The notes beneath the pieces are model-generated. The model did no database searches. It was not told the DNA's origin and worked only from the letters and a program-made list of their open reading frames with translations. Position numbers and translations under genes: made by a program. This document shows, piece by piece, positions 32,332 to 55,117 of a stretch of DNA of 64,000 nucleotides; the stretch's first letter is position 1; every line of letters starts with the position of its first letter. The DNA lies in IMG/VR virus record IMGVR_UViG_3300043418_000114, positions 300,248 to 364,247 of that record. One strand, written 5' to 3'.

Positions 32332-32625
32332 ACTCTCATTTCCGAAGCCAAAGCCCGCTTCAATCATAATTCAGCAAAAGCATACCTCAAAGACAAATAC
32401 GACAGCAAGTTAATTGTTGCCGAGCAAGGTGGTTTATGGAAAGCCACTCCAGAACTAATTGGGTATCTCGCGTCCAACACGGACGAGCATGTCGTTTTAA
32501 TTGACAATTTTGAAAACCCAGTCTTTGTCAATCGAGTATCATTACTAGAAGTGTTGAACAAGACATACAACGATACCATGCAACTATGGTACAGTGAATG
32601 GAAAGAGTTGGAAAGCAAAAGATGA
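32320..32625 (+). CDS. Hypothetical protein, first gene of the tailoring cluster
   Basis: 101-aa ORF with an ATGA overlap into the next gene. Confidence 0.7.
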   Translation: MDTKTLISEAKARFNHNSAKAYLKDKYDSKLIVAEQGGLWKATPELIGYLASNTDEHVVLIDNFENPVFVNRVSLLEVLNKTYNDTMQLWYSEWKELESKR

Positions 32626-33428
32626 GCAAGGGCGTATTGCTATTCGCATTCAATTCTCCCAAATACAACTACTATGAAATGGCAGTTGCGACTGCAAAGC
32701 GAATCAATCATTTTTTGGGATTACCAGTAACAATCGTTACTGATGAAACCTCTTTGCCTGAGAGAATCACGTATGAATTTGACAATGTAATATTGGCAGA
32801 TGCTGATGCGTCAAATGTACGTGATTGGGGTATTTGGATCAACAAAGGTAGATATCGTGCATACGCATTGAGTCCATACGATGAAACTATCTTACTTGAT
32901 ACTGACTACATGGTAAACTCTGACAAACTATTAGCTTTATTCAATCTACCTACTGACTTTGCTTGTCATGATAATGTGAATTTCTTGATGCATCCAAACT
33001 TACCACAGGAAGTATTGAGTTCTTATAGTTTTAAGACCTTATGGGCAACAGTGGTTTACTTTAAGAAAACCGAACGAGCAAAGCAAATCTTTGATTGCTT
33101 GGAAATGGTTCAGAAAAACTTCGAACATTATTCCATGATTCATAGCTTTATCAGTGGCACATTCAGAAATGATTATGCACTAACATTGGCACTACGTATC
33201 GTGAATGGTCATACCTATCCAAAGGCAGATATCATCCCTTGGAACTTAGTTCACGTTGGCAAGAATACTCAAGTATATCGTAACACAGACGATCCACTAA
33301 ACACAGAATACACAGTTATGTTTGATAATTGGAATCGTGGCAAGATTCGCAAAGAATATATGACAGTGAAAGACATGGACTTTCATATGATGGTCAAAGA
33401 AAACTTCTTGGAGCTAATCAATGACTAA
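32622..33428 (+). CDS. GT-A-fold glycosyltransferase-like protein
   Basis: SPYDETILLDTDY (DxD) motif; the start is set at the ATGA overlap (MSKGVLLFA). Confidence 0.6.
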   Translation: MSKGVLLFAFNSPKYNYYEMAVATAKRINHFLGLPVTIVTDETSLPERITYEFDNVILADADASNVRDWGIWINKGRYRAYALSPYDETILLDTDYMVNSDKLLALFNLPTDFACHDNVNFLMHPNLPQEVLSSYSFKTLWATVVYFKKTERAKQIFDCLEMVQKNFEHYSMIHSFISGTFRNDYALTLALRIVNGHTYPKADIIPWNLVHVGKNTQVYRNTDDPLNTEYTVMFDNWNRGKIRKEYMTVKDMDFHMMVKENFLELIND

Positions 33429-34158
33429 AGGATTTGTTATTATGGCACAAGGTGACGTATACGTAAAGTGCGCCACTACCTTAAAGAACAGCATACTCAA
33501 AGTGATGCCATCTGCCAATATTACAATTATCACCACAGACATGTTGCCTCATGGCGATCTTGGTGGCTTCCACAATGATTGGCAAGTATATGAGTGCAGT
33601 CCTTACGACGAGACTATCAAGCTGGAGGCAGACATGATCATACCTCGGAACATTGATCATTGGTGGGATATTCTGTCACAGAAAGATATTGTAGTCTCGT
33701 CAACTATTCGCAACTTCATGGGTGAGATTTCAGACATTAGAGCATATCGCAAATTCATTGACGATAATAGTCTTCCAGACGTATACAATGCCATTACGTA
33801 CTTTAAAAAGTCAGATACTGCAAAGCAGTTCTTTGAAATTGTGCGTGATGTATTTGAGAACTGGCAAGATTATAAAGCTATTCTCAAGTGTAACCCACAA
33901 GAGGATGCAAGCACTGATTGGGTATATGCAATTGCATGCCTTATCATGAAACCAGAAAATACAACGATGCCTGGATTTACTGAAATGAGTATGATCCACA
34001 TGAAACAGTTCATTAATGGCATGCCAACCGAAGATTGGACTGATACGCTAGTTTATGAAATACTACCAGATGTTGTCAGAGTAAATACAGTTCCTCAGTT
34101 GTATCCATTTCACTATCATGTGAAAGACTTTTCTGATAAACTATTGAGAGTTGTATGA
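33421..34158 (+). CDS. GT-A-like protein, paralog of the upstream gene
   Basis: SPYDETIKLEADM (ExD variant); shares the YFKK....KQ.F motif with the upstream gene. Confidence 0.55.
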   Translation: MTKGFVIMAQGDVYVKCATTLKNSILKVMPSANITIITTDMLPHGDLGGFHNDWQVYECSPYDETIKLEADMIIPRNIDHWWDILSQKDIVVSSTIRNFMGEISDIRAYRKFIDDNSLPDVYNAITYFKKSDTAKQFFEIVRDVFENWQDYKAILKCNPQEDASTDWVYAIACLIMKPENTTMPGFTEMSMIHMKQFINGMPTEDWTDTLVYEILPDVVRVNTVPQLYPFHYHVKDFSDKLLRVV

Positions 34159-34499
34159 CAGAAAATAATGATGATTTTGTAATTATTTGGGAAGCTCCCG
34201 TTATCGTTCCGCCTGTGTTTCGTCTATATTATGATGACACAGGCAAAGTACTTTTCTATTCGTGTGAAGAACACGAAGGTAATCACATCGTTATCGACGC
34301 ACAGACTTATGCAGAAGCAAGACCAGACGTTAGAGTAATAGATGGTAAAATTTCTACGGTACCTAGACACATGGTAATATCAAAATTGATGCCAAGTGAA
34401 ACAGGTACAAAGTGTGCTAGTGAAGACATGAGTATTATCGTCGATGATGATTATGAAGGTACAACTGCACATTGGAAATTAAACATTTATGAACTATGA
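34155..34499 (+). CDS. Hypothetical protein
   Basis: 114-aa ORF overlapping both neighbours. Confidence 0.65.
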   Translation: MTENNDDFVIIWEAPVIVPPVFRLYYDDTGKVLFYSCEEHEGNHIVIDAQTYAEARPDVRVIDGKISTVPRHMVISKLMPSETGTKCASEDMSIIVDDDYEGTTAHWKLNIYEL

Positions 34500-35445
34500 A
34501 AATATTATTGATGTTGCAGACTTGGATTGCATCTATCTCAGCTATGATGAACCGCAAAAAGAAGAATTTTGGCTCAAGATTAAGAACATGGTACCTTGGG
34601 CCAAACGTGTTGACGGTGTTAAGGGTAGTGACGCGGCTCACAAGGCTGCCGGGGAAGCATCAGACACCGAACGATTTATTCTAATCGACGGGGATAATAT
34701 GCCAAATGAAGATTTCTTCAATATCCAATTAGACTTCACTGGCAAAGACGAAACATTTAAACAAGCACAGTTTAGATGGAAAGCTATCAACGCTATTAAT
34801 GGATTACGTTATGGCAACGGTGGCATGAGTAGTTGGACAAAAGAATATGTTGCCAACATGAAGACTCATGAACATCAAACAGACGGTGATATCTCACGTG
34901 TTGCTGACTTCTGCATGGATAGCAAAGATAGCCTCTATTGGGCGATGTGGGATTGCTATTCTACTACTTACCCCAACATGACTCCGTTTCAAGCGTGGAG
35001 AGCTGGATTCCGTGAAGGTGTCAAGATGGTTTTAGACAAAGGCGCAGTGCCACCAATTGAAACATTCAAAGAAAGTCTATCAACACGCAATCTAGACAAC
35101 TTGACTATTTGGCATAACGTTGGTACAGACGTTGAGAATGGTATCTGGGCAATATATGGCGCCAGAATGGGCACGTTCTACACGCTTTTGCTAGATAATT
35201 GGGACCACAAGGACGTACAATGGTTTGATAACTATCCAGTCATGTGGGAAACAATCAAAGATTTAGATCCAGTAGCAGAGAGTGATGGCATTGGTCATCA
35301 CCTATCAACTAAGCTAGGTCTACCAATTTGCACATTGAGTCCAGAACAAAGCAAGTTCTTCAAGCGCCACTACGGCGCAGACAAATACAATCGCGGACCA
35401 CTCGTCACTGAGATGGAAGTAGTTCGTCAAATTCAAGGATGGTAA
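34489..35445 (+). CDS. Glycosyltransferase-like protein (GT-A type)
   Basis: YLSYDEP, RVDGVKG..AAH, FILIDGDN (DxD), N..NGL.YG and AWRAGFRE motifs; paralogous to the C-terminus of 57362-61066. Confidence 0.55.
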   Translation: MNYENIIDVADLDCIYLSYDEPQKEEFWLKIKNMVPWAKRVDGVKGSDAAHKAAGEASDTERFILIDGDNMPNEDFFNIQLDFTGKDETFKQAQFRWKAINAINGLRYGNGGMSSWTKEYVANMKTHEHQTDGDISRVADFCMDSKDSLYWAMWDCYSTTYPNMTPFQAWRAGFREGVKMVLDKGAVPPIETFKESLSTRNLDNLTIWHNVGTDVENGIWAIYGARMGTFYTLLLDNWDHKDVQWFDNYPVMWETIKDLDPVAESDGIGHHLSTKLGLPICTLSPEQSKFFKRHYGADKYNRGPLVTEMEVVRQIQGW

Positions 35446-36848
35446 TGAGCGAGAACTACGAACAAAAACGAATCAAAGACATTAAGATCAAAATCGAAAA
35501 CGAAGTTGGTCCTACGTTTTGTCTTGCCAAGTGGCATCATGTGACTATGTACTTGCAGAGTGGCGAGACACATAGTTGCTATCACCCGCGTCCTCACAAG
35601 ATTCCAATTCACGAGATTAAAGAGAACCCATCTGCATTGCACAATACGCAAGAAAAGAAGATGGAGCGTAAACTCATGCTCGAAGGTGGCAAGCCTGAAG
35701 GCTGTCAATACTGTTGGAACATCGAAGCAATGGGTCCTGATTATATCAGCGATAGACACATTCGCAACGCTAGTATCTTCACAGAAGAAAGATACAATCA
35801 AACTAAGAACAGTTGGACAGTTGACGTTAATCCAGAATACCTAGAAATCAATTTCGGCAACGAATGTAATTTCAAGTGTGGCTATTGTCATCCAAAATAC
35901 AGCACAAGTTTCTACAACGAGATTAAGCAAAATGGACCTGTAACCAGTGTCAAGAATCATCGTTGTGATATTGACTGGATGACACTGTATCAGCGTGAAG
36001 ACGAAAACCCATATGTTGACGCATTCTGGGAATGGTGGCCTGAACTACGCAAGACTCTAAACATCATGCGTGTAACAGGTGGCGAACCAACGATGCACAA
36101 GAGTACATGGACTCTGTTAAATAAGATTGCAGAGGATCCCATGCCTGAGTTGGAGTTGAATGTCAACAGCAACTTGGGAACAAAAACAGCGTTAGTTGAA
36201 AAGCTAGCTGATAGCGTTAAAACTCTGTGCGATGAAAAGAAAATCCGCGCCTTTAAACTCTTTACTAGCTTAGACACATGGGGTCCTCGTGCTGAATATA
36301 TTCGCACAGGTCTAGACTTGGAGTTGTGGGAAAAGAACTTTCACACATACCTAACTCGCACTGATAGTCCAATCACGTTCATGATTACGTTCAATATTTT
36401 CAGTGTAACAACTTTCAAGTCATTCTTAGAGAAGTTCATTGAATGGCGTAAGATTTATGGCTGGTACGACGATCCAGTTAACCCACAACATCGTGTACGT
36501 TTTGACACACCATACTTGCGTGAACCACTGCAATATGATATGAACATTCTTCCTAAAGAGGAATTCATGCCATACATGCATGAAGCACTTGAGTACATGA
36601 AAGCCAACACTGACGACAAACGAAGCGATGCATTCAGTACAATGGAATATGAAAAGTTCAAGCGTGTTGTTGACTACATGGCAGAGACAGTGTATCCAGA
36701 AGAAAAGCTAATTGAAGGTCGCAGGGACTTCTACAACTGGTTCAACGAATTAGATGAACGCAGAGACACGGACATGCTATCCATTTTCCCAGAGTACATG
36801 AACTTCTATCGTGTGTGCCAAGAAGTAAACAGGCTTAATCCTAAATGA
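35445..36848 (+). CDS. Radical SAM protein with N-terminal twitch/SPASM-like Cys motif
   Basis: CNFKCGYC, TGGEPT, and N-terminal FCLAKW...SCYH...CQYC. Confidence 0.85.
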   Translation: MSENYEQKRIKDIKIKIENEVGPTFCLAKWHHVTMYLQSGETHSCYHPRPHKIPIHEIKENPSALHNTQEKKMERKLMLEGGKPEGCQYCWNIEAMGPDYISDRHIRNASIFTEERYNQTKNSWTVDVNPEYLEINFGNECNFKCGYCHPKYSTSFYNEIKQNGPVTSVKNHRCDIDWMTLYQREDENPYVDAFWEWWPELRKTLNIMRVTGGEPTMHKSTWTLLNKIAEDPMPELELNVNSNLGTKTALVEKLADSVKTLCDEKKIRAFKLFTSLDTWGPRAEYIRTGLDLELWEKNFHTYLTRTDSPITFMITFNIFSVTTFKSFLEKFIEWRKIYGWYDDPVNPQHRVRFDTPYLREPLQYDMNILPKEEFMPYMHEALEYMKANTDDKRSDAFSTMEYEKFKRVVDYMAETVYPEEKLIEGRRDFYNWFNELDERRDTDMLSIFPEYMNFYRVCQEVNRLNPK

Positions 36849-38116
36849 GTTCACCATTCTTTAAAAAGTACTTGCTAGAAAAAAGCGATACCTTTTGTAT
36901 GGCTCCATGGACGCACATTCACACTACACCAACTGGTGTAGTTACTCCTTGTTGCATTTCAAAATCATGCGGATCACAGATTGGCATGGCTAATGCTAGA
37001 AACGTGTCATTAATGGAAGCAGTCAATTGTAACCAGATGAAGAAACTACGTCTGGACATGCTCAATGGTGTCAAGAATCCTGAGTGCGCCGCCTGTCATT
37101 CACATGAAGAACAGGGTGTTAAGAGTTTTCGAATGAACATGAATTCAGACTTTGCTCACCATTTCGACGAATTGATTGAATACACTAATGTCGATGGATC
37201 ATTGAATGAATTTCAAATGAAATATTTTGATATTCGATTTTCAAATATCTGTAACTTCAAATGCCGAACCTGCAATTCGAGTTTCAGTACTCAATGGGAA
37301 CAGGAAGACCTTAAATCAAAGTTATTTCATGCACGAATTGTTCCTAAGAATGACAATCCAGAGTTCTTGGCTGACGTTATTGGTCAGATTGAACACATGG
37401 AGAAAGCATACTTTGCTGGTGGTGAACCCTTAATCACAGAAGAACATTACATTCTACTAGAGGAAATGATTAAGCAAGGTCGTACAGATATTAAACTGAG
37501 CTATAATACCAATCTAAGTAATTTGAAATTCAAAGACAAAGACCTGCTGGCATTATGGAAAAACTTTGATAACCCAATTTATATTTCTGCAAGCATTGAT
37601 CACTATGGTGAACGTGCTGAGTATATTCGTTCAGGCACAGATTGGGGCAAAGTAGAAGCTAACTTTAAAAAAGCCAAGAAGACACCATACATCAACCTAC
37701 AAATGAACACGGTATTGAGTGTGTTCAATTACTTGACCATTTATGAGTTCTATGAGTATTTGATAGACAAGAAACTCTATACTCCACGAGACGGAACATT
37801 CTCGTTATATAACATGAGTACGCCTCCTCATCTTACGGCACATATCTTGCCATCTGATTTGAAACAAATTGGCATAGAAAAGATGGACAAAACAATAGAA
37901 CTATTCACTGCGAAGAAATTCCAACCAGAACAAATCAACCAGTTGGCTATCACGACACCATGGGTACAGTCACAAGACACCTGGAACGAACATAAGAAAC
38001 TTTTTAAAGAAGAAGTAAAGCGATTAGATAAGATCAGGGGAGAAGACTTTCAGAAAGTTTTTCCTGAATTAGCAGTGCTACTAGATGATGAACGCAAACG
38101 CCTTTGGCCCGTATGA
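36845..38116 (+). CDS. Radical SAM protein with N-terminal twitch/SPASM-like domain
   Basis: FCMAPW...PCC...CAAC, CNFKCRTC and AGGEPL. Confidence 0.88.
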   Translation: MSSPFFKKYLLEKSDTFCMAPWTHIHTTPTGVVTPCCISKSCGSQIGMANARNVSLMEAVNCNQMKKLRLDMLNGVKNPECAACHSHEEQGVKSFRMNMNSDFAHHFDELIEYTNVDGSLNEFQMKYFDIRFSNICNFKCRTCNSSFSTQWEQEDLKSKLFHARIVPKNDNPEFLADVIGQIEHMEKAYFAGGEPLITEEHYILLEEMIKQGRTDIKLSYNTNLSNLKFKDKDLLALWKNFDNPIYISASIDHYGERAEYIRSGTDWGKVEANFKKAKKTPYINLQMNTVLSVFNYLTIYEFYEYLIDKKLYTPRDGTFSLYNMSTPPHLTAHILPSDLKQIGIEKMDKTIELFTAKKFQPEQINQLAITTPWVQSQDTWNEHKKLFKEEVKRLDKIRGEDFQKVFPELAVLLDDERKRLWPV

Positions 38117-39357
38117 AAACAATTCCAATTATAAATAAAGACCATCTGTTGAATGACAGTAAAACATTCTGCATGTTTCCATGGCTACACTTGAACGTAA
38201 CGCCGAAGGGTGATATCTATCCATGTTGTAGCAATGACTATACTCAGCCGTTTGGCAACACAAAACAAACCTCTCTAAAGGATGCATTCAATGATCCAAA
38301 GATGAAAGAATTGCGTTTGGACATGCTAAATGATCGTAAGAATGATATTTGTAAATTCTGCTATCAGCACGAAGAAGCAGGCCCTCATTCATTCAGAAAC
38401 TATAGCAAAGAACACTTTGCAAAGCACTTCGATGAAACAGTTCCAACTACACTAGAAGATGGCTCAGTTCCTGAGTTCAAGATGCACTATTTTGATATTC
38501 GATTTAGCAACATCTGCAACTTCAAATGCCGAACATGTGGAAGCGAGTTTAGTAGTCAATGGGGCGCAGAAATGCGAGCCAATCATGATCCAAAACATCC
38601 AATCGTGATTCATGCCGATGAACAAGGCAATCTATTACAGGAAGTATTGGATCAAGTTGAACATATTGACTTGGCCTACTTTGCAGGCGGGGAACCTACA
38701 CTAACCGAAGAGCATTACATTATGCTTGAGGAAATGATTCGTAAAGGCCGCACTGACATTACTCTTAGATACAACACTAATGCTAGTAATATCAAGTTCA
38801 AGGACTATGACCTACTAGACATGTGGAAACACTTTAAAAAGATCGAATTGAGTTGTTCAGTTGATCATTATGGTGAACGTGCTGAGTGGCTACGATCTGG
38901 CACAGATTGGGGTGTAGTTGAATCCAACCTACTCAAATTTAGAGAATTAGATTATGTGTCATTCCAAATGAACACTGTATTCAGCATCTTCAATTATAGC
39001 ACAATTGGAGAGTTCTATCAGTATTTGAAAGATAAAGGAATTGTACGCAGGGAAGACTGGTATCATAGTCTTTATCTTGCAGTTCACCCTAGTTACTACA
39101 GCGCCAAGAGTTTGCCAAAGGAACTAAAACTAGATGCGGCAAGTAAAGCACTAGCATGGGCAAAATCAAATGAAGGCGATGGCACGAGTCTATCAAGATT
39201 AATCACTGATGCTGTTAATTTCGCGGGTGATAGTGATACATGGAATGAGAATAAGCCTATTTTCTTGCAACACACTGATAGTATTGATAGAATTAGAAAG
39301 GAAAGTTTCTGGAAAACTTTTCCCGAGTTAAATAAATTGCGTGATTTGACGGAGTAA
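38113..39357 (+). CDS. Radical SAM protein with N-terminal twitch/SPASM-like domain
   Basis: FCMFPW...PCC...CKFC, CNFKCRTC and AGGEPT; close paralog of the upstream gene; ATGA overlap. Confidence 0.88.
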   Translation: MKTIPIINKDHLLNDSKTFCMFPWLHLNVTPKGDIYPCCSNDYTQPFGNTKQTSLKDAFNDPKMKELRLDMLNDRKNDICKFCYQHEEAGPHSFRNYSKEHFAKHFDETVPTTLEDGSVPEFKMHYFDIRFSNICNFKCRTCGSEFSSQWGAEMRANHDPKHPIVIHADEQGNLLQEVLDQVEHIDLAYFAGGEPTLTEEHYIMLEEMIRKGRTDITLRYNTNASNIKFKDYDLLDMWKHFKKIELSCSVDHYGERAEWLRSGTDWGVVESNLLKFRELDYVSFQMNTVFSIFNYSTIGEFYQYLKDKGIVRREDWYHSLYLAVHPSYYSAKSLPKELKLDAASKALAWAKSNEGDGTSLSRLITDAVNFAGDSDTWNENKPIFLQHTDSIDRIRKESFWKTFPELNKLRDLTE

Positions 39358-39358
39358 T

Positions 39359-40630
39359 ATGCAAGATCCAATCGAAGTAGAAAATTTAGTAAAGAATGGT
39401 AAACACTTTTGTGTCTTGCCTTGGGTACACTTTCATTCATGGCCAGATGGACGAGTAATGCCATGCTGTATTGCAGACAGCAACATGCCTGTTGCCGAAA
39501 TCAAAGAGAATGAATCAATCATTCAAATGATGAATAGCGATGACTACAAAAAGATGCGTAGTGCTATGTTAAACGACGAGCCAGTAGAAGCGTGTAAGCG
39601 ATGCTATGACTTGGAGTTGATGGGCACGTGGACGATGCGTCAAAGTCACAATAAGCGCCGCGGCTTGGAGTATGCTAAAGAAATCGCAGAAACAACCAAA
39701 GACAATGGCGAGATTACAGACTTCAAGATGAAGTACATGGACTTGCGTTTTAGCAACATGTGCAACATGAAGTGTCGTAGTTGCGGTCCTGGATGTTCTA
39801 GTCTATGGGCACAAGAGTTCTTAGATGAACGTGGCCCCGAAGTATTCGAACAGTACTTTAAGACTAGAAAGATCGTAATCAACAAGGCAGAAGAAGTTGG
39901 GTTCATGAACAAACTCAAGCCTTATTTGAAAGACGTAACTGAAGTGTACTTTGCTGGTGGTGAAATCATCATCACTCCTGAACACTACGAATGCCTTGAC
40001 TATTGGATCGAAAATGGGTTGAATGAACAAATTGAATTGACATACACCACCAACCTAAGTTCATTAAAATACAAAGACAAAGATTTGATTGGCTATTGGA
40101 AGAAGTTTCCTAAGCTACAAATTTGGGCAAGTCTCGATGGCATGGGCGATGTTGCAGAAGTCATTCGCAAGGGCACAGACTGGGATAGAATTGTTAAGAA
40201 CATTAAAGCTATCAAAGAACAAGTGCCACATGCACAGTTTCAGATCACTCCTACAATTAGTATTTGGAACGTGTTCCATTTCCCAGACTTCTTTGACTAC
40301 ATGATCGAGAATGGCTTTATCAACACAAAGTCTAGTCCTCGTTTCAATCTGGCAACGAATCCATGGTACGCAAATATTATGATTTTACCAGTTCACGTTA
40401 AACGTAGATTGGCAGAGTTGTACAGAGTGTATCAAAACAAATACAAAGACAACCAAGACATATATAACGGCTTTAAGATGATTATCTACAACCTAACAGT
40501 TGGTGATGAAAATAAAGGCGGTATTTTAGAGTTCAAGCAGTTCAATGATGAACTAGACGAATTCCGTAATGAAAAGTTTGAGGACATATGTCCGGAAATT
40601 AAAGAGGTATACGAATGGGCAAAAAGCTAA
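39359..40630 (+). CDS. Radical SAM protein with N-terminal twitch/SPASM-like domain
   Basis: FCVLPW...PCC...CKRC, CNMKCRSC and AGGEII. Confidence 0.88.
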   Translation: MQDPIEVENLVKNGKHFCVLPWVHFHSWPDGRVMPCCIADSNMPVAEIKENESIIQMMNSDDYKKMRSAMLNDEPVEACKRCYDLELMGTWTMRQSHNKRRGLEYAKEIAETTKDNGEITDFKMKYMDLRFSNMCNMKCRSCGPGCSSLWAQEFLDERGPEVFEQYFKTRKIVINKAEEVGFMNKLKPYLKDVTEVYFAGGEIIITPEHYECLDYWIENGLNEQIELTYTTNLSSLKYKDKDLIGYWKKFPKLQIWASLDGMGDVAEVIRKGTDWDRIVKNIKAIKEQVPHAQFQITPTISIWNVFHFPDFFDYMIENGFINTKSSPRFNLATNPWYANIMILPVHVKRRLAELYRVYQNKYKDNQDIYNGFKMIIYNLTVGDENKGGILEFKQFNDELDEFRNEKFEDICPEIKEVYEWAKS

Positions 40631-41586
40631 TAGCGATTGAGGCTCCACAGCCCTATCTAGCAGTTACATGGCAAGTTAATAACTACTGTAACTTCAAATG
40701 CAGTTATTGCAATCCTGGTAATTGGGGTGGTACTGATATCAATGATGGTAACTTAGACCTGTACATCAGCAATCTAGAAATCATCATTAACAAATACAAA
40801 GCCGCAGGGTATAAAAACTTCAAGTTCTTTTTCTCTGGTGGTGAGCCTACCGCATGGAAGAACTTCATTCCAATTTGTGAATGGATTTACGAAAAGCTAC
40901 CACGTGCAACTCTTGCAGTAAACACTAACTTGAGTCGTCCATTGGCATGGTGGCAAAAGCATTACCATCTATTCGATGACGTAGTTGCTAGCTTCCACGT
41001 AGAGTTTTCTGACAAGAAACGCTATGAAGAAAATTCTCTTTTCTTGTGTGATAAAGTAAACTACTTGTCAACCAAAATGTTGATGCATGAGGAACGTTTC
41101 TGGGAAGTCGTAGAGTATGGCAACTATCTAAAGACTGTGATGCCAAACTACTTCTTAGAATGGACTCCGTTATTTGATGAAATGTCAGTCAATGCTGGTC
41201 CTTGGCACTACAAAGACCCTGCTAAAGAACAATGGCTACGTGAGCATACAACTGAAATTCAGCAGACTAAGCGCAAGCCAATGAAGCGAACAACCCTAAC
41301 TGTTAGCTACAACAAATATGACGATGATAGCACAGAAGTATGTAACTCAAATGAGGTCATTGTTGCAGGTAACAACTTCTTTAGTGGCTGGAACTGCAAC
41401 GTTGGTGACGCTATCTTTATCAATCCAGTCGGCGAAATGAGTCTGGCAAGTTGTGGCATGGGCGGCTATGTTGGTCATATTCTAACTGACATTAATCGAG
41501 TAGGTCCAAAACAAATTGTCTGTGAGAAAGAACATTGTCACTGTGGCACAGATATCATTATTCCTAAGTTTATGGATACCGAATAA
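40615..41586 (+). CDS. Radical SAM protein with C-terminal auxiliary Cys cluster
   Basis: CNFKCSYC, SGGEPT, and C-terminal GWNC...SC...C..EHCHC. Confidence 0.85.
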   Translation: MGKKLIAIEAPQPYLAVTWQVNNYCNFKCSYCNPGNWGGTDINDGNLDLYISNLEIIINKYKAAGYKNFKFFFSGGEPTAWKNFIPICEWIYEKLPRATLAVNTNLSRPLAWWQKHYHLFDDVVASFHVEFSDKKRYEENSLFLCDKVNYLSTKMLMHEERFWEVVEYGNYLKTVMPNYFLEWTPLFDEMSVNAGPWHYKDPAKEQWLREHTTEIQQTKRKPMKRTTLTVSYNKYDDDSTEVCNSNEVIVAGNNFFSGWNCNVGDAIFINPVGEMSLASCGMGGYVGHILTDINRVGPKQIVCEKEHCHCGTDIIIPKFMDTE

Positions 41587-41606: not shown

Positions 41607-42917
41607 ATGGAAAAACCTATTAAGATTGTATATAGTTGGATTGGTCCACGTGGACCAATTGTCAACACTGAATTACCAAACATACTATGTTTTTCTGCCG
41701 TTGCAGAGGGTACTAATACCACATCAGGCAATTTCTGGTCCGATGATGTATGGTGGAGAATCTTTTTACCACACGATGATTATGCGTTATCATCGACTAT
41801 GGCAATTGATGAAAATGATAAATTTATCTTCCCATTCACACTTGGATGGAGAATTCCATTCAACATGTTGTTTTTTCCAAAGAGTGGCATTTTAGAATTT
41901 TCACACACTCCTGCACACATTATACATCACGTGCGATCAAACGGTGGATACTTCTTAATTGACATGTCAGCCGAAGCGTTTATCAAAGACGATCATTTGA
42001 ACGCATTGCATTCATATTTTTCATTCTACAATCATATTCCAATGGGAAAGATTATCTATCTAACAGGATGTATGAATGCCGACGAGGTATATAATAATTA
42101 CTGCGCTAGACATGGAATTCCAGAAGGCACCAGAGACCGCATCAAGATGGTATCGTTCCCAGTGTCGCAACATTCACTATCGCAAAATTTAGATTCTGTT
42201 CCTGAACCCAAGTATGATCCAACGTTTGTTCCAGAAAAGCGTTTCTTATGTTGGAATAGAAGATTCAGAAAGCATAGAAGTGCGCTGGCATTAGCATTCG
42301 AGAAATTTGGAATGATCGACAAAAGCTACTACAGTCTTGATCTAGTGGATCCAGAAAACGTATCATATCACTTTAGAAATTCCGTTGACATGTACAGTGA
42401 TCCTCAAATTGGAATCACAACTGAATTAGTAAATCAATTAATGGCCAAGTTGCCATTGGTAATCGACGGTGAAACAGAAATCAATCAGATGTGTCAAGAT
42501 TTCAATGCAAGTGCTAGAAAATTTTACACTAACAGTTTGGTCAGTGTTGTAACTGAAACTAACTTTGATGCAACAGAACTAACATTGACAGAAAAATCAT
42601 GGAAGCCTGCCAAGGAAAAGCATCCATTTATTATTGTAGGTGTGCCAGGCGCATTAAAGGCAATGCGTGAACTAGGACTAATGACATTCAGTGAATTCTG
42701 GCCAGAAGACTACGATGAAATTCAAGATCATTCAGAACGATTATATCGCATAGTTGAAATATGCAAAATAATCAATAACTGGTCTGATGCAAAGATATTG
42801 GATTTTAAACACCGAGTACAATATATTCTAGAACATAATTATACTGCACTGAAAGCCAACACGGCTTATAATGTCGCAGACGTTCTATCAAAACACATAA
42901 GAAAGACTAACCCATGA
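41607..42917 (+). CDS. Hypothetical protein with a C-terminal 'VTET...TEK..KP...PF' domain (possibly GT-B/GT10-like)
   Basis: FLCWNRR.R.HR, SVVTETNF, LTEKSWKP, HPFIIVG, G..TFSEFW.E.YD and ILEHNY motifs, shared with the C-terminus of 52495-54279. Confidence 0.45.
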   Translation: MEKPIKIVYSWIGPRGPIVNTELPNILCFSAVAEGTNTTSGNFWSDDVWWRIFLPHDDYALSSTMAIDENDKFIFPFTLGWRIPFNMLFFPKSGILEFSHTPAHIIHHVRSNGGYFLIDMSAEAFIKDDHLNALHSYFSFYNHIPMGKIIYLTGCMNADEVYNNYCARHGIPEGTRDRIKMVSFPVSQHSLSQNLDSVPEPKYDPTFVPEKRFLCWNRRFRKHRSALALAFEKFGMIDKSYYSLDLVDPENVSYHFRNSVDMYSDPQIGITTELVNQLMAKLPLVIDGETEINQMCQDFNASARKFYTNSLVSVVTETNFDATELTLTEKSWKPAKEKHPFIIVGVPGALKAMRELGLMTFSEFWPEDYDEIQDHSERLYRIVEICKIINNWSDAKILDFKHRVQYILEHNYTALKANTAYNVADVLSKHIRKTNP

Positions 42918-43894
42918 AGAAAATATTAGTATGTGGTGCTGGCGGATTCATTGGCACCCATCTAGTTGAGAAACTTAAAGAGCAAGGACACTATGTTGTT
43001 GGTGTTGATTTGCACTATCCTTTGTACTGTGAGACAAAGGCTGATAAGTTTTACCTCGTCGATTTGCGAGAGCAATACAGTGTTCGTAGTTTATTTGATG
43101 AAGTCAAGTACGACGAAGTATATCAGTTAGCGGCAGACATGGGTGGAGCAGGCTATATCTTTACTGGTGAACACGATGCTGACATTATGCATAATAGTTG
43201 TCAAATCAATTTAAACATACTTGCCGAAATGGTAAAGACTGGCGTGAAGAAAGTATTCTATAGCTCAAGTGCTTGTATGTATCCAAGTCATAATCAGGAA
43301 GATCCTGATAATCCACTATTGGCAGAAGATTCGGCATATCCTGCTAATCCAGACAGTGAGTATGGATGGGAGAAACTATTCTCAGAACGATTGTACATGA
43401 CATATGCAAAGAATTATGGCATTACTGCACGTATCGCACGTTTTCACAATATCTTTGGTCCACGTGGCTCATGGAACAACGGCAAAGAAAAAGCACCTGC
43501 GGCATTGTGTCGCAAAGTGGCAATGTGCGAAAACGGTGGCATCATCGATGTATGGGGTCCAGGCAATCAAACACGTAGTTTCTTATTCATCGATGAATGC
43601 ATTGAAGGCATTCAACGAATCATGGAAAGCGATTACGACAAGCCATTGAACTTAGGTAGCACTAGAATGATTTCAATCAATCAACTAGTCTTTTTGATTG
43701 CAAAGCTGAATGGGAAAAGTGTTTCTATTCGTAACATCGATGGACCCATGGGTGTAATGGGTCGCAACAGCGACAACAAGTTAATCAAAGAAACAATTGA
43801 TTGGACACCTGACGAAGATTTAGAATCCGGCTTGGTAAAGACGTATGCATGGATTCAAGAGCAAATTGCCAATGGCGAGAAAGACGTAGAATGA
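42914..43894 (+). CDS. NAD-dependent epimerase, GDP-mannose 3',5'-epimerase-like extended SDR
   Basis: GAGGFIG, LAADMGGAGYI, YSSSACMYP, YGWEK (YxxxK), RFHNIFGP and GKEKAPAALCRK. Confidence 0.85.
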   Translation: MKKILVCGAGGFIGTHLVEKLKEQGHYVVGVDLHYPLYCETKADKFYLVDLREQYSVRSLFDEVKYDEVYQLAADMGGAGYIFTGEHDADIMHNSCQINLNILAEMVKTGVKKVFYSSSACMYPSHNQEDPDNPLLAEDSAYPANPDSEYGWEKLFSERLYMTYAKNYGITARIARFHNIFGPRGSWNNGKEKAPAALCRKVAMCENGGIIDVWGPGNQTRSFLFIDECIEGIQRIMESDYDKPLNLGSTRMISINQLVFLIAKLNGKSVSIRNIDGPMGVMGRNSDNKLIKETIDWTPDEDLESGLVKTYAWIQEQIANGEKDVE

Positions 43895-44766
43895 CCAAAA
43901 AGTATATCGTTGGTCTAGGATGCAGTTGGACACAAGGTGAAGGCGGATGGACAGATGAAGTTATGCGCCAGTACCCAGAAGGTCGTGTGCAAATCGCACA
44001 TCGTGGCAAAGATGATTACCATTTGCGTAAAATGGAACACGAGAATAGTTGGGTAAATGTACTGTGTCGTGATTATTTTCCAGATCACACTCCAATGAAT
44101 TTGGGTATCAAGGGAATTGGAAATGAAGCGGCAGTACGTCAACTACATTTTTGCAATAGAATTGATTGGGACAACAGCACTGGTATTATCGTACTGATGT
44201 TAAGTGGCTTTGAGCGATGGACAATGTTTAACCCACGCATACATCCTGGATTTGGTCAAGATGACTTTTATTCTAACAACGAGATAGTTCACAACAAATG
44301 GCGCACAGCATGGCCAAACGACAATGACGCAGTGACCTCAATGTATGCCAGAGAACTTTGGTCTGAGCAATTTGTTTCAGGGTTCAATATGATGGCGTTG
44401 TTGGAACTACAACTATTTGCCAAAGCACACAACTTTAAAGTAGTTGTTGCCAACGCATTTAACGATAGACCAGAAGGTATAGTAAACTACCTACGAAACA
44501 ACTTAGGATCATTAGTAGATACATTTGATTGGGAATCAGCCTATGTTCATAACACAACATCACATGTGTCAATGATGCAACACTTGGTTGGTCTAGATGA
44601 CTTAATTCCAAGAGAACACTGGGCTGGATATTATCAATTCTATCGTAGCAGATCATGGCCGGCCACGTATTTAACTAACTGCGATGGAGCACATCCTACA
44701 ATCGAAGGATATAAGGCAATCAGTGAAGAACTTGCCAAGTTTATCAGATTGCGCGGCTATGTATAA
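43891..44766 (+). CDS. SGNH/GDSL-like protein
   Basis: GCSWT block I, GIGN, and C-terminal DGAHP. Confidence 0.6.
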   Translation: MTKKYIVGLGCSWTQGEGGWTDEVMRQYPEGRVQIAHRGKDDYHLRKMEHENSWVNVLCRDYFPDHTPMNLGIKGIGNEAAVRQLHFCNRIDWDNSTGIIVLMLSGFERWTMFNPRIHPGFGQDDFYSNNEIVHNKWRTAWPNDNDAVTSMYARELWSEQFVSGFNMMALLELQLFAKAHNFKVVVANAFNDRPEGIVNYLRNNLGSLVDTFDWESAYVHNTTSHVSMMQHLVGLDDLIPREHWAGYYQFYRSRSWPATYLTNCDGAHPTIEGYKAISEELAKFIRLRGYV

Positions 44767-46681
44767 GAAGAAAATTAGTTTTGTCAACCCAAATTTTCAG
44801 CAAGGACCAAAAGAGTTCAATGCGTATTATTTGCCATATAGCCCTGCTATACTATGGTCTTATGTAGCACAATTTGAAAACATTACTGACGAATATGAGC
44901 TAGGTGAATTCATCTGGCGTAGAGATTTAATTGAAGATGCAGTAGCAAGATTGAAGGATCATGCTATTGTGGGATTCAGTACCTATATTTGGAATCGTAG
45001 TTATAATGCAGTGCTAGCACGTGAGTTAAAGAAAGCCAACCCAGACATTCTTATTCTTGCAGGTGGACCTGAGTACCCAATTGAGAAGCCTAACTTCTTT
45101 AAGACGTACCCATTCATTGATATTTGTGCTAAGTTAGAAGGGGAAAAATCATTCAAGCGAATACTTGAACACTTTTTAACCGACAAAGACTACACAAAGA
45201 TTCCAGGTCTATTGATTAATGACAATGGCAAGACTATTGATACTGGCGATGCAGTGCGTATAGACGACTTAGACACGATACCAAGTCCATATCTAACAGA
45301 CGTATTCAAGCCACTCATGGACAAACATCCTGAGATACGATGGAATGCTACACTAGAGACAAACAGAGGTTGCCCATACGCATGTACATTCTGTGACTGG
45401 GGTTCACTGACGTACAACAAAGTCAAGAAGTTTGACTTAGAACGTGTGTATGCTGAATTAGAATGGATCGGTAAGAACAAGTGTGATTTCGTTTCACTAA
45501 CTGATGCAAACTTTGGCATCTTCCCTGAGCGTGATAGTTTGATTGCTGATAAACTGATTGCCGTACAAAAAGAATACGACAATCCAAAAGCATACACGAT
45601 TGCATGGGCAAAGAATCAAAAGCGTGAAGTTGTGGAGATTGTACGCAAGTTGATTTACGAGGGTGGTTCTAAGATGGGACTTAACCTGAGTGTGCAATCA
45701 ATGGATGACAATGTACTTGAAATCATCAAGCGTAAGAATCTTGAAATGAACAAGATTACCGAAGTGTTTGAAATGTGTGAAGAATACAACATTCCATTAT
45801 ACACTGAATTGATTCTAGGATTACCTGGCGAGACATTGGAAACTTGGAAAGATAACTTCTACAAGTTGTACAAAGCAGGTAATCATACCGGTATTACCGT
45901 GTATCAGGCACAGTTACTAGAGAACGCTGAAATGAACTTGTTGCAACGCAAACTCTACAAACTAGAAGGTCGCATCGTATATGACTATCTAGTTGGTACG
46001 TACAATGAGCATGAGTTAAAAGAGGGCATTGAAGTTATTGTATCAACAAAAGACATGCCATTCGACAAAATGGTTGAAGCACAAGTGTTTAGTTGGTTTA
46101 TGAATACGTTCCATATCAATGGCATCACAAACTATATCAGTCGCTTTCTTGAAAAGTACAGTAACGTAGAGTACGAAGTATTCTACGGCAAACTTCTAGA
46201 GCATATCAAACAAGACGAATGGTTTGCAAGCGAGATTAAGCGCATAGAAGAACACTATAGCAATTGGACAACACACGGTCGCATTGACCACGAACCAATT
46301 CAAGGCATCGAGATTCATGGGTGGAACTTGATTCATAGTACACTGATTAATTTGCATGGCCAAGGTAAACACACGCATGTGTTCGATATCGTAGAAGACT
46401 TCACAAAGCAATTCAAATTGCCTGATGATATCTTTGCAGAATTGATGACACTGCAACGTACATTCTTAGTAGACCATAACAGTATTCAGCAATACCCAAA
46501 AACGCTATCATTCAAGCATGATATCCTAGGATATATTCAAACGAATATGGAACTGGACAAAGATGCAAGTTATGAGTTTGAGTTCCCGGAAGATAAAACA
46601 ATGAGTTTGCAAAGATTCTGCGAACAGATTTTCTTTGCTAGACGTAGAAACTTTGGCAAGTCTTGGATAACAAGGAAATAA
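44759..46681 (+). CDS. Cobalamin-binding radical SAM enzyme (class B methyltransferase-like)
   Basis: GFSTYIWN...AGGP B12-binding region, ETNRGCPYACTFCDWG, ILGLPGET; likely start MYKKKISF at 44759. Confidence 0.85.
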   Translation: MYKKKISFVNPNFQQGPKEFNAYYLPYSPAILWSYVAQFENITDEYELGEFIWRRDLIEDAVARLKDHAIVGFSTYIWNRSYNAVLARELKKANPDILILAGGPEYPIEKPNFFKTYPFIDICAKLEGEKSFKRILEHFLTDKDYTKIPGLLINDNGKTIDTGDAVRIDDLDTIPSPYLTDVFKPLMDKHPEIRWNATLETNRGCPYACTFCDWGSLTYNKVKKFDLERVYAELEWIGKNKCDFVSLTDANFGIFPERDSLIADKLIAVQKEYDNPKAYTIAWAKNQKREVVEIVRKLIYEGGSKMGLNLSVQSMDDNVLEIIKRKNLEMNKITEVFEMCEEYNIPLYTELILGLPGETLETWKDNFYKLYKAGNHTGITVYQAQLLENAEMNLLQRKLYKLEGRIVYDYLVGTYNEHELKEGIEVIVSTKDMPFDKMVEAQVFSWFMNTFHINGITNYISRFLEKYSNVEYEVFYGKLLEHIKQDEWFASEIKRIEEHYSNWTTHGRIDHEPIQGIEIHGWNLIHSTLINLHGQGKHTHVFDIVEDFTKQFKLPDDIFAELMTLQRTFLVDHNSIQQYPKTLSFKHDILGYIQTNMELDKDASYEFEFPEDKTMSLQRFCEQIFFARRRNFGKSWITRK

Positions 46682-46682
46682 G

Positions 46683-47453
46683 ATGATTGTTGACTGGAAA
46701 AAGTACAACAGATTTTTCGCATTTGGATGTAGCTATACCAAATATATGTGGCCAACATGGGCAGATGTTGTATCTAAAACAATGCCAAATGCTGAGTTCT
46801 ATAACTTAGGCAAATCAGGTGGCGGTAACCCCCTCATATCGTATAGAGTTGCAGAAGCAAATAATAGATTTAAGTTCACTGATACTGATTTGATAATGAT
46901 CATGTTTTCTTCATATACTCGTGAAGATAGATGGGTAGAATCATCTTGGCAAAGTTTCGGGAACGTGTATCAAAATAGTTACTATGGTGATGCATGGTGT
47001 AGAAAATATGCAGATGAACGAGGATATATGATTCGTGACGCCGCCGTTATTGATATGACACTCAAGTATGTTGATAGTATGCCATGTGATTCTTATAGCA
47101 TGTTGAGTGTTCCATTCGTGACTGAGGTGGAAGATAACAACAGCGGTGTAACACCAGAAGATATAGCTACACTATACAAGGACACATTTGGTCGATTTAA
47201 ACCATCGTTCAAAGAATTAGAAATAATGCCAAACCCAGTTCTGGACTATAGTGGATTTCAAGATGGACATCCTGCTACGATTCGTCACTATAATTATCTA
47301 AGTAAATTGGGATTTGCACTTTCGGATGCATCCAAACAATTCGCAGACGAATCTACTGAAATATTGAAAACAATAAAGGCACGTAATCTAGTGCCAACTT
47401 ATTTTCCTGAACAAGACAACATGATTTCACTCACTGATAGGATAATGTTTTGA
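46683..47453 (+). CDS. SGNH/GDSL-like protein
   Basis: FGCSYT, NLGKSGGGN and C-terminal DGHP. Confidence 0.6.
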   Translation: MIVDWKKYNRFFAFGCSYTKYMWPTWADVVSKTMPNAEFYNLGKSGGGNPLISYRVAEANNRFKFTDTDLIMIMFSSYTREDRWVESSWQSFGNVYQNSYYGDAWCRKYADERGYMIRDAAVIDMTLKYVDSMPCDSYSMLSVPFVTEVEDNNSGVTPEDIATLYKDTFGRFKPSFKELEIMPNPVLDYSGFQDGHPATIRHYNYLSKLGFALSDASKQFADESTEILKTIKARNLVPTYFPEQDNMISLTDRIMF

Positions 47454-48631: not shown

Positions 48632-48689
48632 CGCTATTGCTTTTTTCTCTTAAATATCATATAATTTAAGAAGATAAAGGAGCTTGTTT

Positions 48690-55028: not shown

Positions 55029-55117
55029 TCAACTTTTTCAAGAACTTAGTGCGAGAATACAAGTATCGCAAACGCATTAAAGAATTACGCAAACGAGATC
55101 CATTCATCTACAAATGA
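55019..55117 (+). CDS. 32-aa basic peptide (MFIINFFKNLVREYKYRKRIKELRKRDPFIYK), absent from the ORF track
   Basis: Fills the gap exactly; overlaps the upstream gene and is ATGA-coupled to the carbamoyltransferase. Confidence 0.7.
   Translation: MFIINFFKNLVREYKYRKRIKELRKRDPFIYK

What the first reader, a model, noticed from the sequence alone, without database searches (positions are those of the whole stretch)
35445..41586. Tandem array of five radical SAM genes, four with the auxiliary Cys domain placed N-terminally
Seen: four consecutive paralogs share FC..(P/K)W.H...G...(PCC/SC)...CxxC ahead of the CxxxCxxC core. Genes 2 and 3 are the closest pair (both YFDIRFSNICNFKCRTC). A fifth enzyme has a C-terminal Cys cluster. 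Known: SPASM/twitch domains are normally C-terminal, and such enzymes include sugar or aminocyclitol dehydrogenases and epimerases (BtrN, NeoN) and peptide maturases. Inference: the retained paralogs may act in sequence on different positions of one substrate or form a heteromer.
Basis: partly seen in the sequence, partly recalled or inferred. Interest (0 to 1): 0.6.

Follow-up and report, generated by a model that had tools for sequence, protein, structure and literature searches.

The report
Radical SAM array in phage glycan island
A freshwater jumbo phage carries five tightly packed, strongly conserved radical SAM enzyme genes, four of them from an already-named but never-studied family with its extra iron-sulfur domain at the front, set among sugar-handling genes, so they most likely tailor sugars for a phage-made glycan.

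Summary
Five consecutive + strand genes (35445-41586) are intact radical SAM enzymes. Genes 1-4 score 315-379 bits on NCBIfam NF033640 "N_Twi_rSAM" (cutoff 170). Their four conserved N-terminal Cys align with BtrN's twitch-domain Cys pattern at the same spacing. Gene 5 has five invariant C-terminal Cys. The N-terminal placement is therefore real but already a curated family; I found no characterised member.

The copies are ancient paralogs (23-48% identity) under strong purifying selection (dN/dS about 0.02-0.03). Their junctions overlap, and the array is syntenic in related contigs. All 78 related viral loci carry 2-5 copies in a modular pattern: gene 1 plus one gene-2/3-type copy is the minimum, the gene 4-gene 5 pair is added together, and gene 2 is optional and fast-evolving.

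The recurring partners look like glycosyltransferases (GT8-like, GT-A fold), with an NDP-sugar dehydrogenase, an epimerase, aminotransferases, B12 radical SAM enzymes and a carbamoyltransferase nearby. No island gene has a membrane segment.

Best reading, as an inference: stepwise radical tailoring of sugars in a cytoplasmic glycosylation pathway, possibly targeting virion fibres. A protein-modifying role is not excluded. The heteromer idea was not tested. These are new members of a known, uncharacterised family.

The parts
35445..36848 (+). g1: N-terminal-twitch radical SAM enzyme (N_Twi_rSAM), the long 'g1-type' orthogroup found once in almost every related viral locus. The ORF opens at 35439; the likely start is 35445 (TAATG overlap with the upstream gene).
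   Evidence: NF033640 315 bits; tree clade; junction; 95% aa identity and dN/dS 0.030 against L162
36845..38116 (+). g2: N_Twi_rSAM of the virus-only g2/g3 clade. It is the optional and fastest-evolving member of the array.
   Evidence: NF033640 379 bits; 62% identity to the L086 ortholog where g1, g3 and g4 are 85-87%; absent from g1-g3-g4-g5 arrays; AlphaFold model pLDDT 93.7
38104..39357 (+). g3: N_Twi_rSAM, sister paralog of g2 (48% identity). The likely start is 38113 (ATGA overlap).
   Evidence: NF033640 374 bits
39359..40630 (+). g4: N_Twi_rSAM of the g4-type orthogroup, whose sisters are Bdellovibrionota genes. It occurs together with g5.
   Evidence: NF033640 371 bits; tree; g4 and g5 both present in 43 loci, both absent in 32
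40615..41586 (+). g5: shorter radical SAM enzyme with N-terminal CxxxCxxC and five invariant C-terminal Cys, probably an auxiliary Fe-S site. It overlaps g4 by 16 nt.
   Evidence: Pfam Radical_SAM weak hit; invariant Cys; homologs next to N_Twi genes in 10 bacterial loci; nearest atlas clusters are viral
32598..34158 (+). Two paralogous GT8-like (glycogenin-like) glycosyltransferase genes (32598-33428 and 33421-34158).
   Evidence: Profile against PDB sequences: glycogenin at 3e-7; paralogy; present in 61-62 of 78 viral loci
34489..35445 (+). o318: GT-A-fold protein with an invariant DxD motif; its end overlaps the start of g1. It is the most constant partner of the array.
   Evidence: AlphaFold model pLDDT 78; Foldseek RmlT/TarP/TarS/PBCV-1 A64R and VIA Z 7-8.8 to GT-A enzymes; invariant D67 and D69; in 72 of 78 viral loci
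41607..42917 (+). o436: virus-only protein family, paralogous to the C-terminal part of o594 (52495-54279). A GT10-like glycosyltransferase is possible but is only a lead.
   Evidence: in 66 of 78 viral loci
42914..43894 (+). NAD-dependent NDP-sugar epimerase/dehydratase
   Evidence: PF01370 at 4e-43
43849..44766 (+). o305: member of the DUF6071-like family (with o256, o250 and o255); weak GDSL/SGNH resemblance.
44684..46681 (+). B12-binding radical SAM enzyme, most like KedN5-type C-methyltransferases but below that model's cutoff.
46683..47453 (+). o256: DUF6071-like family member
   Evidence: in 45 of 78 viral loci
47450..48631 (+). UDP-glucose/GDP-mannose dehydrogenase family enzyme, also found in most minimal 2-copy loci.
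48684..50945 (+). Second B12-binding radical SAM enzyme
50942..51532 (+). Short DegT/DnrJ/EryC1-like aminotransferase piece (196 aa)
52495..54279 (+). o594: its C-terminal ~300 aa are paralogous to o436.
54276..55028 (+). o250: DUF6071 protein
55114..56592 (+). NodU/CmcH/TobZ-type carbamoyltransferase
57362..61066 (+). o1234: large protein whose C-terminal domain (residues about 1006-1231) is an o318-like GT-A domain, with partial repeats further upstream.

Best explanation
The five genes are a co-transcribed, selectively maintained set of radical SAM enzymes inside a roughly 29 kb island of soluble glycan-building proteins. The host genome is a 364 kb freshwater phage with a T4-type capsid. 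Genes 1-4 belong to the curated but uncharacterised N_Twi_rSAM family. Each has the CxxxCxxC cluster that cleaves SAM, plus one auxiliary [4Fe-4S] site held by four Cys in a twitch domain that sits before the barrel rather than after it. Gene 5 is a different radical SAM enzyme with a C-terminal Cys cluster and travels as a fixed pair with gene 4. Shown here: family membership, the conserved Cys pattern, ancient paralogy, purifying selection, overlapping junctions, synteny, modular copy number, and co-occurrence with glycosyltransferase-like and nucleotide-sugar genes. Inferred: each paralog performs a different radical tailoring step (oxidation, epimerisation or deoxygenation type, as in BtrN-like twitch enzymes) on a sugar or nucleotide-sugar intermediate. 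The island's glycosyltransferases would then attach the product in the cytoplasm to a soluble acceptor, most plausibly the Ser/Thr-rich fibre-like proteins encoded just upstream. Gene 2, which is optional and fast-evolving, would add variety to the product.
For: Membership: NF033640 at 315-379 bits. Across 65 members the invariant residues are C18, C37, C81, C84, the C136/C140/C143 triad, GGE, and R96, N137, N223, S250, R262. The N-terminal domain aligns to BtrN's twitch domain with matching Cys spacing. The g2 model is confident, pLDDT 93.7. Maintenance: dN/dS is 0.017-0.030 where it could be computed, and 88-96% aa identity against the closest relative compares with 72-79% for most flanking genes. 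Operon: TAATG/ATGA overlaps and no + strand terminator-like site inside the array. Fragments 100% identical to g1-g5 occur in a freshwater metatranscriptome run. Conservation: syntenic arrays in L009, L010, L011, L013 and L162. All 78 viral loci have 2-5 copies, in defined orthogroups, with a g4-g5 pairing of 43 loci with both against 32 with neither. Glycan context: GT8-like pair; GT-A-fold o318 overlapping g1; epimerase, UGDH-family enzyme, B12 radical SAM enzymes, DegT piece and carbamoyltransferase. The fifth copy, g0, overlaps a DegT sugar aminotransferase at 7.6e-43. Two bacterial N_Twi + g5-like operons include GT2, an FkbM methyltransferase and a GDSL protein. No island ORF has a membrane-like segment.
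Against: No member of the family has a known reaction: I found no paper on it and no close solved structure (best Z 11.7, tied among unrelated radical SAM enzymes). In most bacterial loci the neighbours are not sugar genes (PhoX, ChaN, URO-D, ABC-F), and none of the window's epimerase or UGDH has a counterpart there. Several bacterial members are fused to TPR repeats, which suggests protein partners. o318 and o436 are assigned from fold or weak leads only (Z under 9; atlas score 0.78). The acceptor is a guess. Presence in an RNA library does not prove transcription.
Confidence: 0.5

Rival explanations
1. The enzymes are protein or peptide maturases. They would install cross-links or epimerise residues in virion proteins (the fibre-like proteins or the 6,067-aa protein upstream) or in another protein, as most SPASM/twitch enzymes do.
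For: Secondary model hits include many RiPP maturases. CteB, SuiB, SkfB and anSME are among the top structural neighbours. TPR-N_Twi fusions occur in Elusimicrobia and other bacteria. Bdellovibrionota arrays of up to 8 copies have no sugar genes nearby. The array lies downstream of fibre-like genes, which co-occur in 42-44 of 78 loci.
Against: Pfam finds only SPASM and Radical_SAM, with no peptide-recognition (RRE/PqqD-like) domain. The overlapping junctions leave no room for a precursor gene inside the array. The tightest partners are glycosyltransferase-like genes, not peptides. g0 is paired with a sugar aminotransferase. A strong hairpin separates the fibre-like genes from the island.
Confidence: 0.2
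2. The enzymes act on free nucleotides or nucleic acids, for example viperin-like or MoaA-like chemistry producing modified NTPs, or steps in DNA base hypermodification.
For: The best sequence-profile match of the core to a solved structure is viperin (1.3e-9), with weaker matches to viperin-like enzymes, BlsE and MoaA. NF038283 viperin_w_prok is the second-best model for g2 and g3. The KVP40 homologs sit near a QueC-like gene and NAD-salvage genes.
Against: Those scores are 10-40 bits against cutoffs of 180-284. Structural Z values tie with anSME, PFL-AE and CteB, so the similarity is generic. No nucleotide-metabolism gene is in the island.
Confidence: 0.1
3. The island makes a free small molecule (an aminoglycoside- or nucleoside-antibiotic-like compound) rather than a glycoconjugate, with the radical SAM enzymes as tailoring steps.
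For: KedN5-like and AprD4-like model hits for the B12 radical SAM enzyme. There is also a TobZ-type carbamoyltransferase, DegT aminotransferases and a BtrN-like twitch domain. All proteins are soluble. A similar idea was raised for an aminotransferase + radical SAM pair in a cyanophage (PMC12801897).
Against: At least five glycosyltransferase-like genes form the constant core, while the antibiotic-like tailoring genes are the variable accessories. No resistance or export gene was seen.
Confidence: 0.1
4. The paralogs are subunits of one obligate hetero-oligomeric enzyme rather than independent catalysts.
For: Overlapping genes suggest equal dosage. g4 and g5 occur together in both phages and a bacterial locus.
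Against: Arrays exist with 2, 3, 4 and 5 copies, and g2 is dispensable. Every copy keeps its own complete SAM-cluster and auxiliary-cluster Cys sets. No binding prediction could be run.
Confidence: 0.1

Closest known systems
NCBIfam NF033640 N_Twi_rSAM (twitch domain-containing radical SAM protein)
   Same: g1-g4 and the distant copy g0 match end to end, well above the curated cutoff, with the same N-terminal four-Cys domain followed by the CxxxCxxC core.
   Different: The family has no assigned reaction. Here the members form a fixed-order array of distinct orthogroups inside a phage glycan island, paired with a second kind of radical SAM enzyme (g5).
BtrN (2-deoxy-scyllo-inosamine dehydrogenase) and other twitch radical SAM sugar enzymes
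   Same: The auxiliary-cluster domain is homologous, with the Cys pattern aligned at the same spacing. Four conserved Cys are available for the cluster. The setting is sugar or aminosugar tailoring.
   Different: In BtrN the twitch domain follows the barrel; here it precedes it. The cores are not specifically related (the BtrN core match is insignificant). The proteins here are about 420-470 aa, against BtrN's crystallised chains of 269-270 residues. The substrate is unknown.
Viperin and viperin-like enzymes
   Same: Best sequence-profile match of the core barrel to a solved structure (1.3e-9).
   Different: The viperin chains match only over the core barrel, and the viperin models score 18-34 bits against cutoffs of 180-450. 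This is shared ancestry of the barrel, not membership.
Multi-copy radical SAM modules of T4-type phages (Campylobacter phages CP220/CPt10; Vibrio phage KVP40 group)
   Same: Large myoviruses with T4-type capsids that carry several radical SAM genes, including a five-gene module in CP220 (PMC2853527). KVP40 has three full-length N_Twi-like genes.
   Different: tblastn with g2, g0 and g5 found no Campylobacter phage. The KVP40 genes fall below the family cutoff (119-135 bits) and are not in a comparable glycosyltransferase island. None has a known function.
Phage and virus virion glycosylation systems (mycobacteriophage virion glycosylation; chlorovirus PBCV-1 capsid glycosylation)
   Same: Virus-encoded soluble glycosyltransferases acting in the cytoplasm. 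o318's fold neighbours include the PBCV-1 capsid-glycosylating enzyme.
   Different: As far as I know, those systems involve no radical SAM enzymes. Glycosylation of this phage's virion has not been shown.

Membership tests
NF033640 N_Twi_rSAM | Full-length match to the curated model at or above 170 bits | tested here: met
   g1 315, g2 379, g3 374, g4 371 bits; g0 346.5 bits. g5 scores 29 bits and is not a member.
NF033640 N_Twi_rSAM | Radical SAM CxxxCxxC cluster motif and GGE SAM-binding motif | tested here: met
   C136/C140/C143 and G192-G193-E194 (g2 numbering) are invariant in 65 members.
NF033640 N_Twi_rSAM | Twitch-type auxiliary-cluster domain placed N-terminal to the barrel | tested here: met
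   Pfam SPASM at residues 18-86; four invariant Cys; alignment to the BtrN twitch domain at i-E 8.5e-5 with Cys aligned.
NF033640 N_Twi_rSAM | Actual binding of two [4Fe-4S] clusters and SAM cleavage | not testable with these tools
   Needs anaerobic reconstitution, EPR or Mossbauer spectroscopy and 5'-deoxyadenosine assays.
Canonical SPASM/twitch radical SAM enzymes (SFLD subgroup 17) | Auxiliary domain located C-terminal to the barrel | tested here: not met
   The domain is N-terminal in g1-g4. The literature describes the C-terminal position as the usual one and notes N-terminal Cys sets in some members (PMC9477430).
RiPP-maturing radical SAM/SPASM enzymes | Peptide-recognition (RRE/PqqD-like) domain and an adjacent precursor peptide gene | tested here: not met
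   Pfam reports only SPASM and Radical_SAM. The genes overlap, leaving no room for a precursor gene inside the array. The small conserved flanking ORFs o101 and o114 have 0 and 2 Cys. A distant or unrecognised substrate protein is not excluded.
Viperin family (NF038283 / TIGR04278) | Match at or above the curated cutoff (180 / 450 bits) | tested here: not met
   22-34 bits on NF038283 and 18 bits on TIGR04278
MoaA GTP 3',8-cyclase (TIGR02666) | Match at or above 284 bits | tested here: not met
   22-30 bits
BtrN-like sugar/aminocyclitol dehydrogenases and epimerases | Specific sequence relationship of the catalytic core and a shared substrate class | tested here: inconclusive
   Only the twitch domain aligns significantly (24.9 bits); the core match is insignificant (3.6 bits). 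The substrate cannot be tested here.
STM4011 family radical SAM protein (NF038073), considered for g5 | Match at or above 200 bits | tested here: not met
   The bacterial g5 homolog L028:3776-4777 scores 48.5 bits. The model is not among the window g5's listed hits.

The most novel reading that the evidence does not exclude
N_Twi radical SAM arrays are a combinatorial radical sugar-editing system. Each orthogroup would perform a different, possibly new, radical reaction on a nucleotide-sugar or nascent glycan. The optional, fast-evolving members (g2, extra copies) would diversify a glycan coat on the fibres of a very widespread group of freshwater and marine phages with T4-type capsids. That would be a chemically new layer of phage surface variation, also used by predatory Bdellovibrionota.
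Probability: 0.2. Interest if true: 0.8.

Novelty: new member of a known kind. Interest (0 to 1): 0.45.

Why it matters
The family is large. It is curated by NCBI, yet I found no known reaction for it and no close solved structure. This window gives it a defined and repeatable setting: a fixed gene order, a fixed partner enzyme (g5), glycosyltransferase neighbours and candidate substrates made next door, such as the product of the UGDH-family dehydrogenase. Cultured relatives exist in which genetics is possible (KVP40 group, K566, RsoM2USA). If the sugar-tailoring reading is right, it would add radical chemistry to phage glycobiology and could yield new sugar-modifying enzymes. If the protein-modifying reading is right, it would be a new kind of virion maturation.

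Tried and rejected
- Near-identical DNA search against cultured phages found nothing.
- Sequence search of g2 against solved structures found nothing meaningful.
- Literature searches found no paper on the family: N-terminal twitch, NF033640/N_Twi_rSAM, jumbo phage + radical SAM + glycosyltransferase, phage-encoded radical SAM. One search was rejected for term length.
- Bacterial neighbourhoods gave no common functional theme. Clustering 435 neighbours from 70 loci returned only lineage-specific synteny: PhoX, ChaN, URO-D, ABC-F, a class-III aminotransferase, endonuclease I, penicillin amidase. A heme/tetrapyrrole link (URO-D and ChaN next to Flavobacteriales copies) was considered and set aside as lineage synteny.
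- dN/dS against five relatives at about 60-90% identity failed because synonymous sites were saturated. The closest relative was used instead, and dS is still high there.
- NCBIfam, PHROGs and permissive Pfam scans left o318, o436, o594, o1234, o256 and o326 without family names. The GT10 lead for o436 was not confirmed by Pfam.
- The g5 C-terminal Cys region has no sequence match to solved SPASM/twitch domains, so I do not call it a twitch domain.
This gives no verdict and is no evidence either way.
- The ESM Atlas structure library was unavailable.
- The large profile search was not used, because the family scans had settled membership.
Full report
**What is there.** The window is the last 64 kb of a 364,247-bp virus record with direct terminal repeats. 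The genome encodes a T4-type Gp23 major capsid protein (E 2.8e-99). Sequencing runs that hold the array are almost all freshwater metagenomes. The junctions read TAATG (o318/g1, so g1 probably starts at 35445), ATGA (g1/g2), ATGA (g2/g3, so g3 probably starts at 38113), a 1-nt spacer (g3/g4) and a 16-nt overlap (g4/g5). No + strand terminator-like site lies inside the array. A 15-bp-stem hairpin at 32296-32331 separates the last fibre-like gene from the genes that follow.

**The observation.** Pfam places a SPASM-type domain at residues about 18-86 of g2-g4, ahead of the Radical_SAM domain. NCBIfam NF033640, "N_Twi_rSAM, twitch domain-containing radical SAM protein", matches g1-g4 end to end at 315-379 bits against a cutoff of 170. 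A fifth member, g0, lies at G000:C1:14914-16098.

In an alignment of 65 viral and bacterial members, the invariant residues (g2 numbering) are C18, C37, C81 and C84; C136, C140 and C143; G192-G193-E194; and R96, N137, N223, S250 and R262. A profile of that alignment aligns its N-terminal positions 10-82 to the C-terminal twitch domain of BtrN. BtrN's SC...LPC...CxxC pattern falls on FC...PCC...CxxC at the same spacing (domain i-E 8.5e-5). g5 keeps CxxxCxxC, SGGEPT and five invariant C-terminal Cys. That C-terminal region has no sequence match to solved SPASM/twitch domains.

The N-terminal placement is real, but it is already a curated family, and RadicalSAM.org has noted N-terminal Cys sets in this megacluster (PMC9477430).

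**History and selection.** The paralogs are old. g2 and g3 share 48% identity, g4 shares 32% with them, and g1 and g0 share 23-29% with the rest. Against the closest relative (a 361-kb contig, L162), the five proteins are 88-96% identical, compared with 72-79% for most flanking genes. Where dS could be estimated, dN/dS is 0.017-0.030. Comparisons with more distant relatives were saturated at synonymous sites. Variants in related strains from DNA runs are spaced mostly three bases apart in the g1 stretch that was listed. None of the copies is decaying.

**Distribution.**
- The word search found 5,526 proteins at E <= 1e-5, with many at 60-88% identity to g2.
- The array and its flanks are syntenic in related contigs: giant protein, fibre-like genes, GT-like genes, g1-g5, o436, epimerase, B12 radical SAM gene.
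All 78 fetched loci carry 2-5 copies.
- The tree resolves three orthogroups. The g1-type occurs about once per locus, including the 2-copy loci. The g2/g3-type is virus-only: a single gene in 2-copy loci, duplicated in larger arrays. The g4-type groups with Bdellovibrionota genes.
- g2 is the fast member: 62% identity to its L086 ortholog, where g1, g3 and g4 are 85-87%. It is also optional, since g1-g3-g4-g5 arrays exist.
- g4-type and g5 co-occur: both present in 43 loci, both absent in 32. Of the three discordant loci, two have no g5 hit in the fetched stretch and one has a g4-type copy at 38%, under my 40% cutoff.
- In bacteria the family is found in Bdellovibrionota, Bacteroidota, Elusimicrobiota, Pseudomonadota, Spirochaetota and Synechococcus. 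Tandem arrays there reach 8 copies, and some members carry TPR fusions.
- g5-like genes sit beside N_Twi genes in 10 bacterial loci.
- Among cultured phages, RsoM2USA has a true member (305 bits) and Vibrio phage K566 has two of three above the cutoff. KVP40 has three full-length but sub-threshold relatives.

**Context.** The constant partners in viral loci are o318 (72 of 78), o436 (66), GT245 and o594 (62 each), GT276 (61), o1234 (55), g5 (50) and o256 (45). The epimerase, B12 radical SAM enzymes, UGDH-family enzyme, DegT piece and carbamoyltransferase are variable, although the UGDH-family enzyme is present in most minimal loci.

These partners form paralog families:
- GT276 and GT245.
- o318 and the C-terminal domain of o1234.
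- o436 and the C-terminal part of o594.
- o256, o305, o250 and o255 (DUF6071-like).

What could be assigned:
- The GT276/GT245 profile matches glycogenin (GT8) at 3e-7.
- The o318 model (pLDDT 78) has a GT-A fold in its first ~165 residues. Its neighbours are RmlT, TarP, TarS, chondroitin polymerase and the PBCV-1 capsid-glycosylating enzyme, at modest Z of 7-8.8, and the family keeps an invariant DxD motif.
- o436 has only a weak GT10 lead, which Pfam did not confirm.
- g0 overlaps a DegT/DnrJ/EryC1 sugar aminotransferase at 7.6e-43.
- Two bacterial operons with N_Twi and g5-like genes also hold GT2, an FkbM methyltransferase and a GDSL protein.
- None of the 24 island ORFs from 32.3 to 61.1 kb has a membrane-like segment. 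The fibre-like protein just upstream (31332-32282) is 31% Ser+Thr.

**Structure.** The g2 model is confident (pLDDT 93.7, pTM 0.90). Its neighbours are only generic radical SAM cores: anSME Z 11.7, BlsE 11.1, PFL-AE 10.9, CteB 10.7, viperin 10.5, SkfB 10.4, MoaA 10.3, and Foldseek TM-scores of 0.3-0.5. By sequence profile, the closest solved core is viperin (1.3e-9). Viperin, MoaA and the RiPP maturase models all score far below their cutoffs.

**Expression.** A freshwater metatranscriptome run holds 100%-identical fragments over parts of g1, g2, g3, g4 and g5. This suggests expression in nature but does not prove it, because DNA can be present in RNA libraries.

**Interpretation.** The best-supported reading is that the five genes are independent, sequentially acting tailoring enzymes in a cytoplasmic glycan pathway. 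The N_Twi auxiliary cluster has four conserved Cys, as in BtrN, and would serve electron transfer during oxidation- or epimerisation-type steps on sugars. g4 and g5 work as a pair. g2 adds optional variety. The acceptor may be the fibre-like proteins. Every statement about substrate and acceptor is an inference (confidence about 0.5).

The main rival is protein modification of virion proteins (about 0.2), supported by the TPR fusions and the family's kinship with peptide maturases. Nucleotide chemistry and small-molecule biosynthesis are less likely (about 0.1 each). An obligate heteromer of all copies is contradicted by the variable copy number. The g4-g5 pairing could not be tested.

**Novelty.** These are new members of a known, curated, but functionally uncharacterised family. 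Multi-copy radical SAM modules in T4-type phages have been reported before without a function (PMC2853527), and an aminotransferase + radical SAM pair has been noted in a cyanophage (PMC12801897). What is new here is the defined, modular array with a fixed partner, set inside a glycosyltransferase island across a large uncultured phage group.

No alternative genetic code was needed.

Noticed in passing
window 11088-29291 (+): A single 6,067-aa ORF directly upstream of the fibre-like genes. Relatives have syntenic ORFs of 6,178-6,527 aa with only faint FG-GAP or lactonase hits. It has three hydrophobic stretches and is 20% Ser+Thr.
   Followed up: partly
G000:C1:14914-16098 (L004:1483-2697) and L004:417-1505: A fifth N_Twi_rSAM copy near the other end of the genome record. 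It overlaps the end of a DegT/DnrJ/EryC1 sugar aminotransferase gene.
   Followed up: yes
window 44684-46681 and 48684-50945 (+): Two B12-binding radical SAM enzymes. The first is most like KedN5-type C-methyltransferases (247 bits, cutoff 700). This brings the window's radical SAM gene count to seven.
   Followed up: partly
window 32296-32331 (+): A 15-bp-stem hairpin followed by a T-rich tail, just after the last fibre-like gene and overlapping the start of the 101-aa ORF. It is a likely transcript boundary between the fibre-like genes and the island.
   Followed up: no
window 50942-51532 and 51522-52502 (+): The DegT-like ORF is only 196 aa and matches positions 164-243 of the 360-position model. 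In other viral loci it nearly always comes with the following unannotated 326-aa ORF, so it may be a split or remodelled aminotransferase.
   Followed up: no
L013:6983-7648 (-): In one related phage contig, a NUMOD3-containing (homing-endonuclease-like) ORF on the opposite strand is inserted between the o114 and o318 homologs.
   Followed up: no
window about 36005-36047 (inside g1): Contigs from three independent DNA runs stop matching or jump at this spot. One run shows a joint from 36040 to 37418 with 37 other letters at low depth. This may be a variation or recombination breakpoint in related strains.
   Followed up: no
L022, L025, L030, L054 (one Elusimicrobia MAG) and L020 (Bacteriovoracaceae): Bacterial genomes hold arrays of N_Twi genes: eight copies within 12 kb in L020, and repeated ~870-1,080-aa proteins that fuse long TPR repeat regions to an N_Twi enzyme in the Elusimicrobia MAG.
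   Followed up: partly
L028 and L041: Two bacterial operons combine N_Twi genes, g5-like genes and further radical SAM/SPASM proteins, one a 743-aa double enzyme. L041 also has a GT2 glycosyltransferase and an FkbM methyltransferase, and L028 has a GDSL-domain protein.
   Followed up: partly
window 41607-42917 (o436) and 36845-38116 (g2): These two genes evolve about three times faster at the protein level than their neighbours across the same genome pairs (dN 0.28-0.40 against 0.04-0.14), while still under purifying selection.
   Followed up: partly
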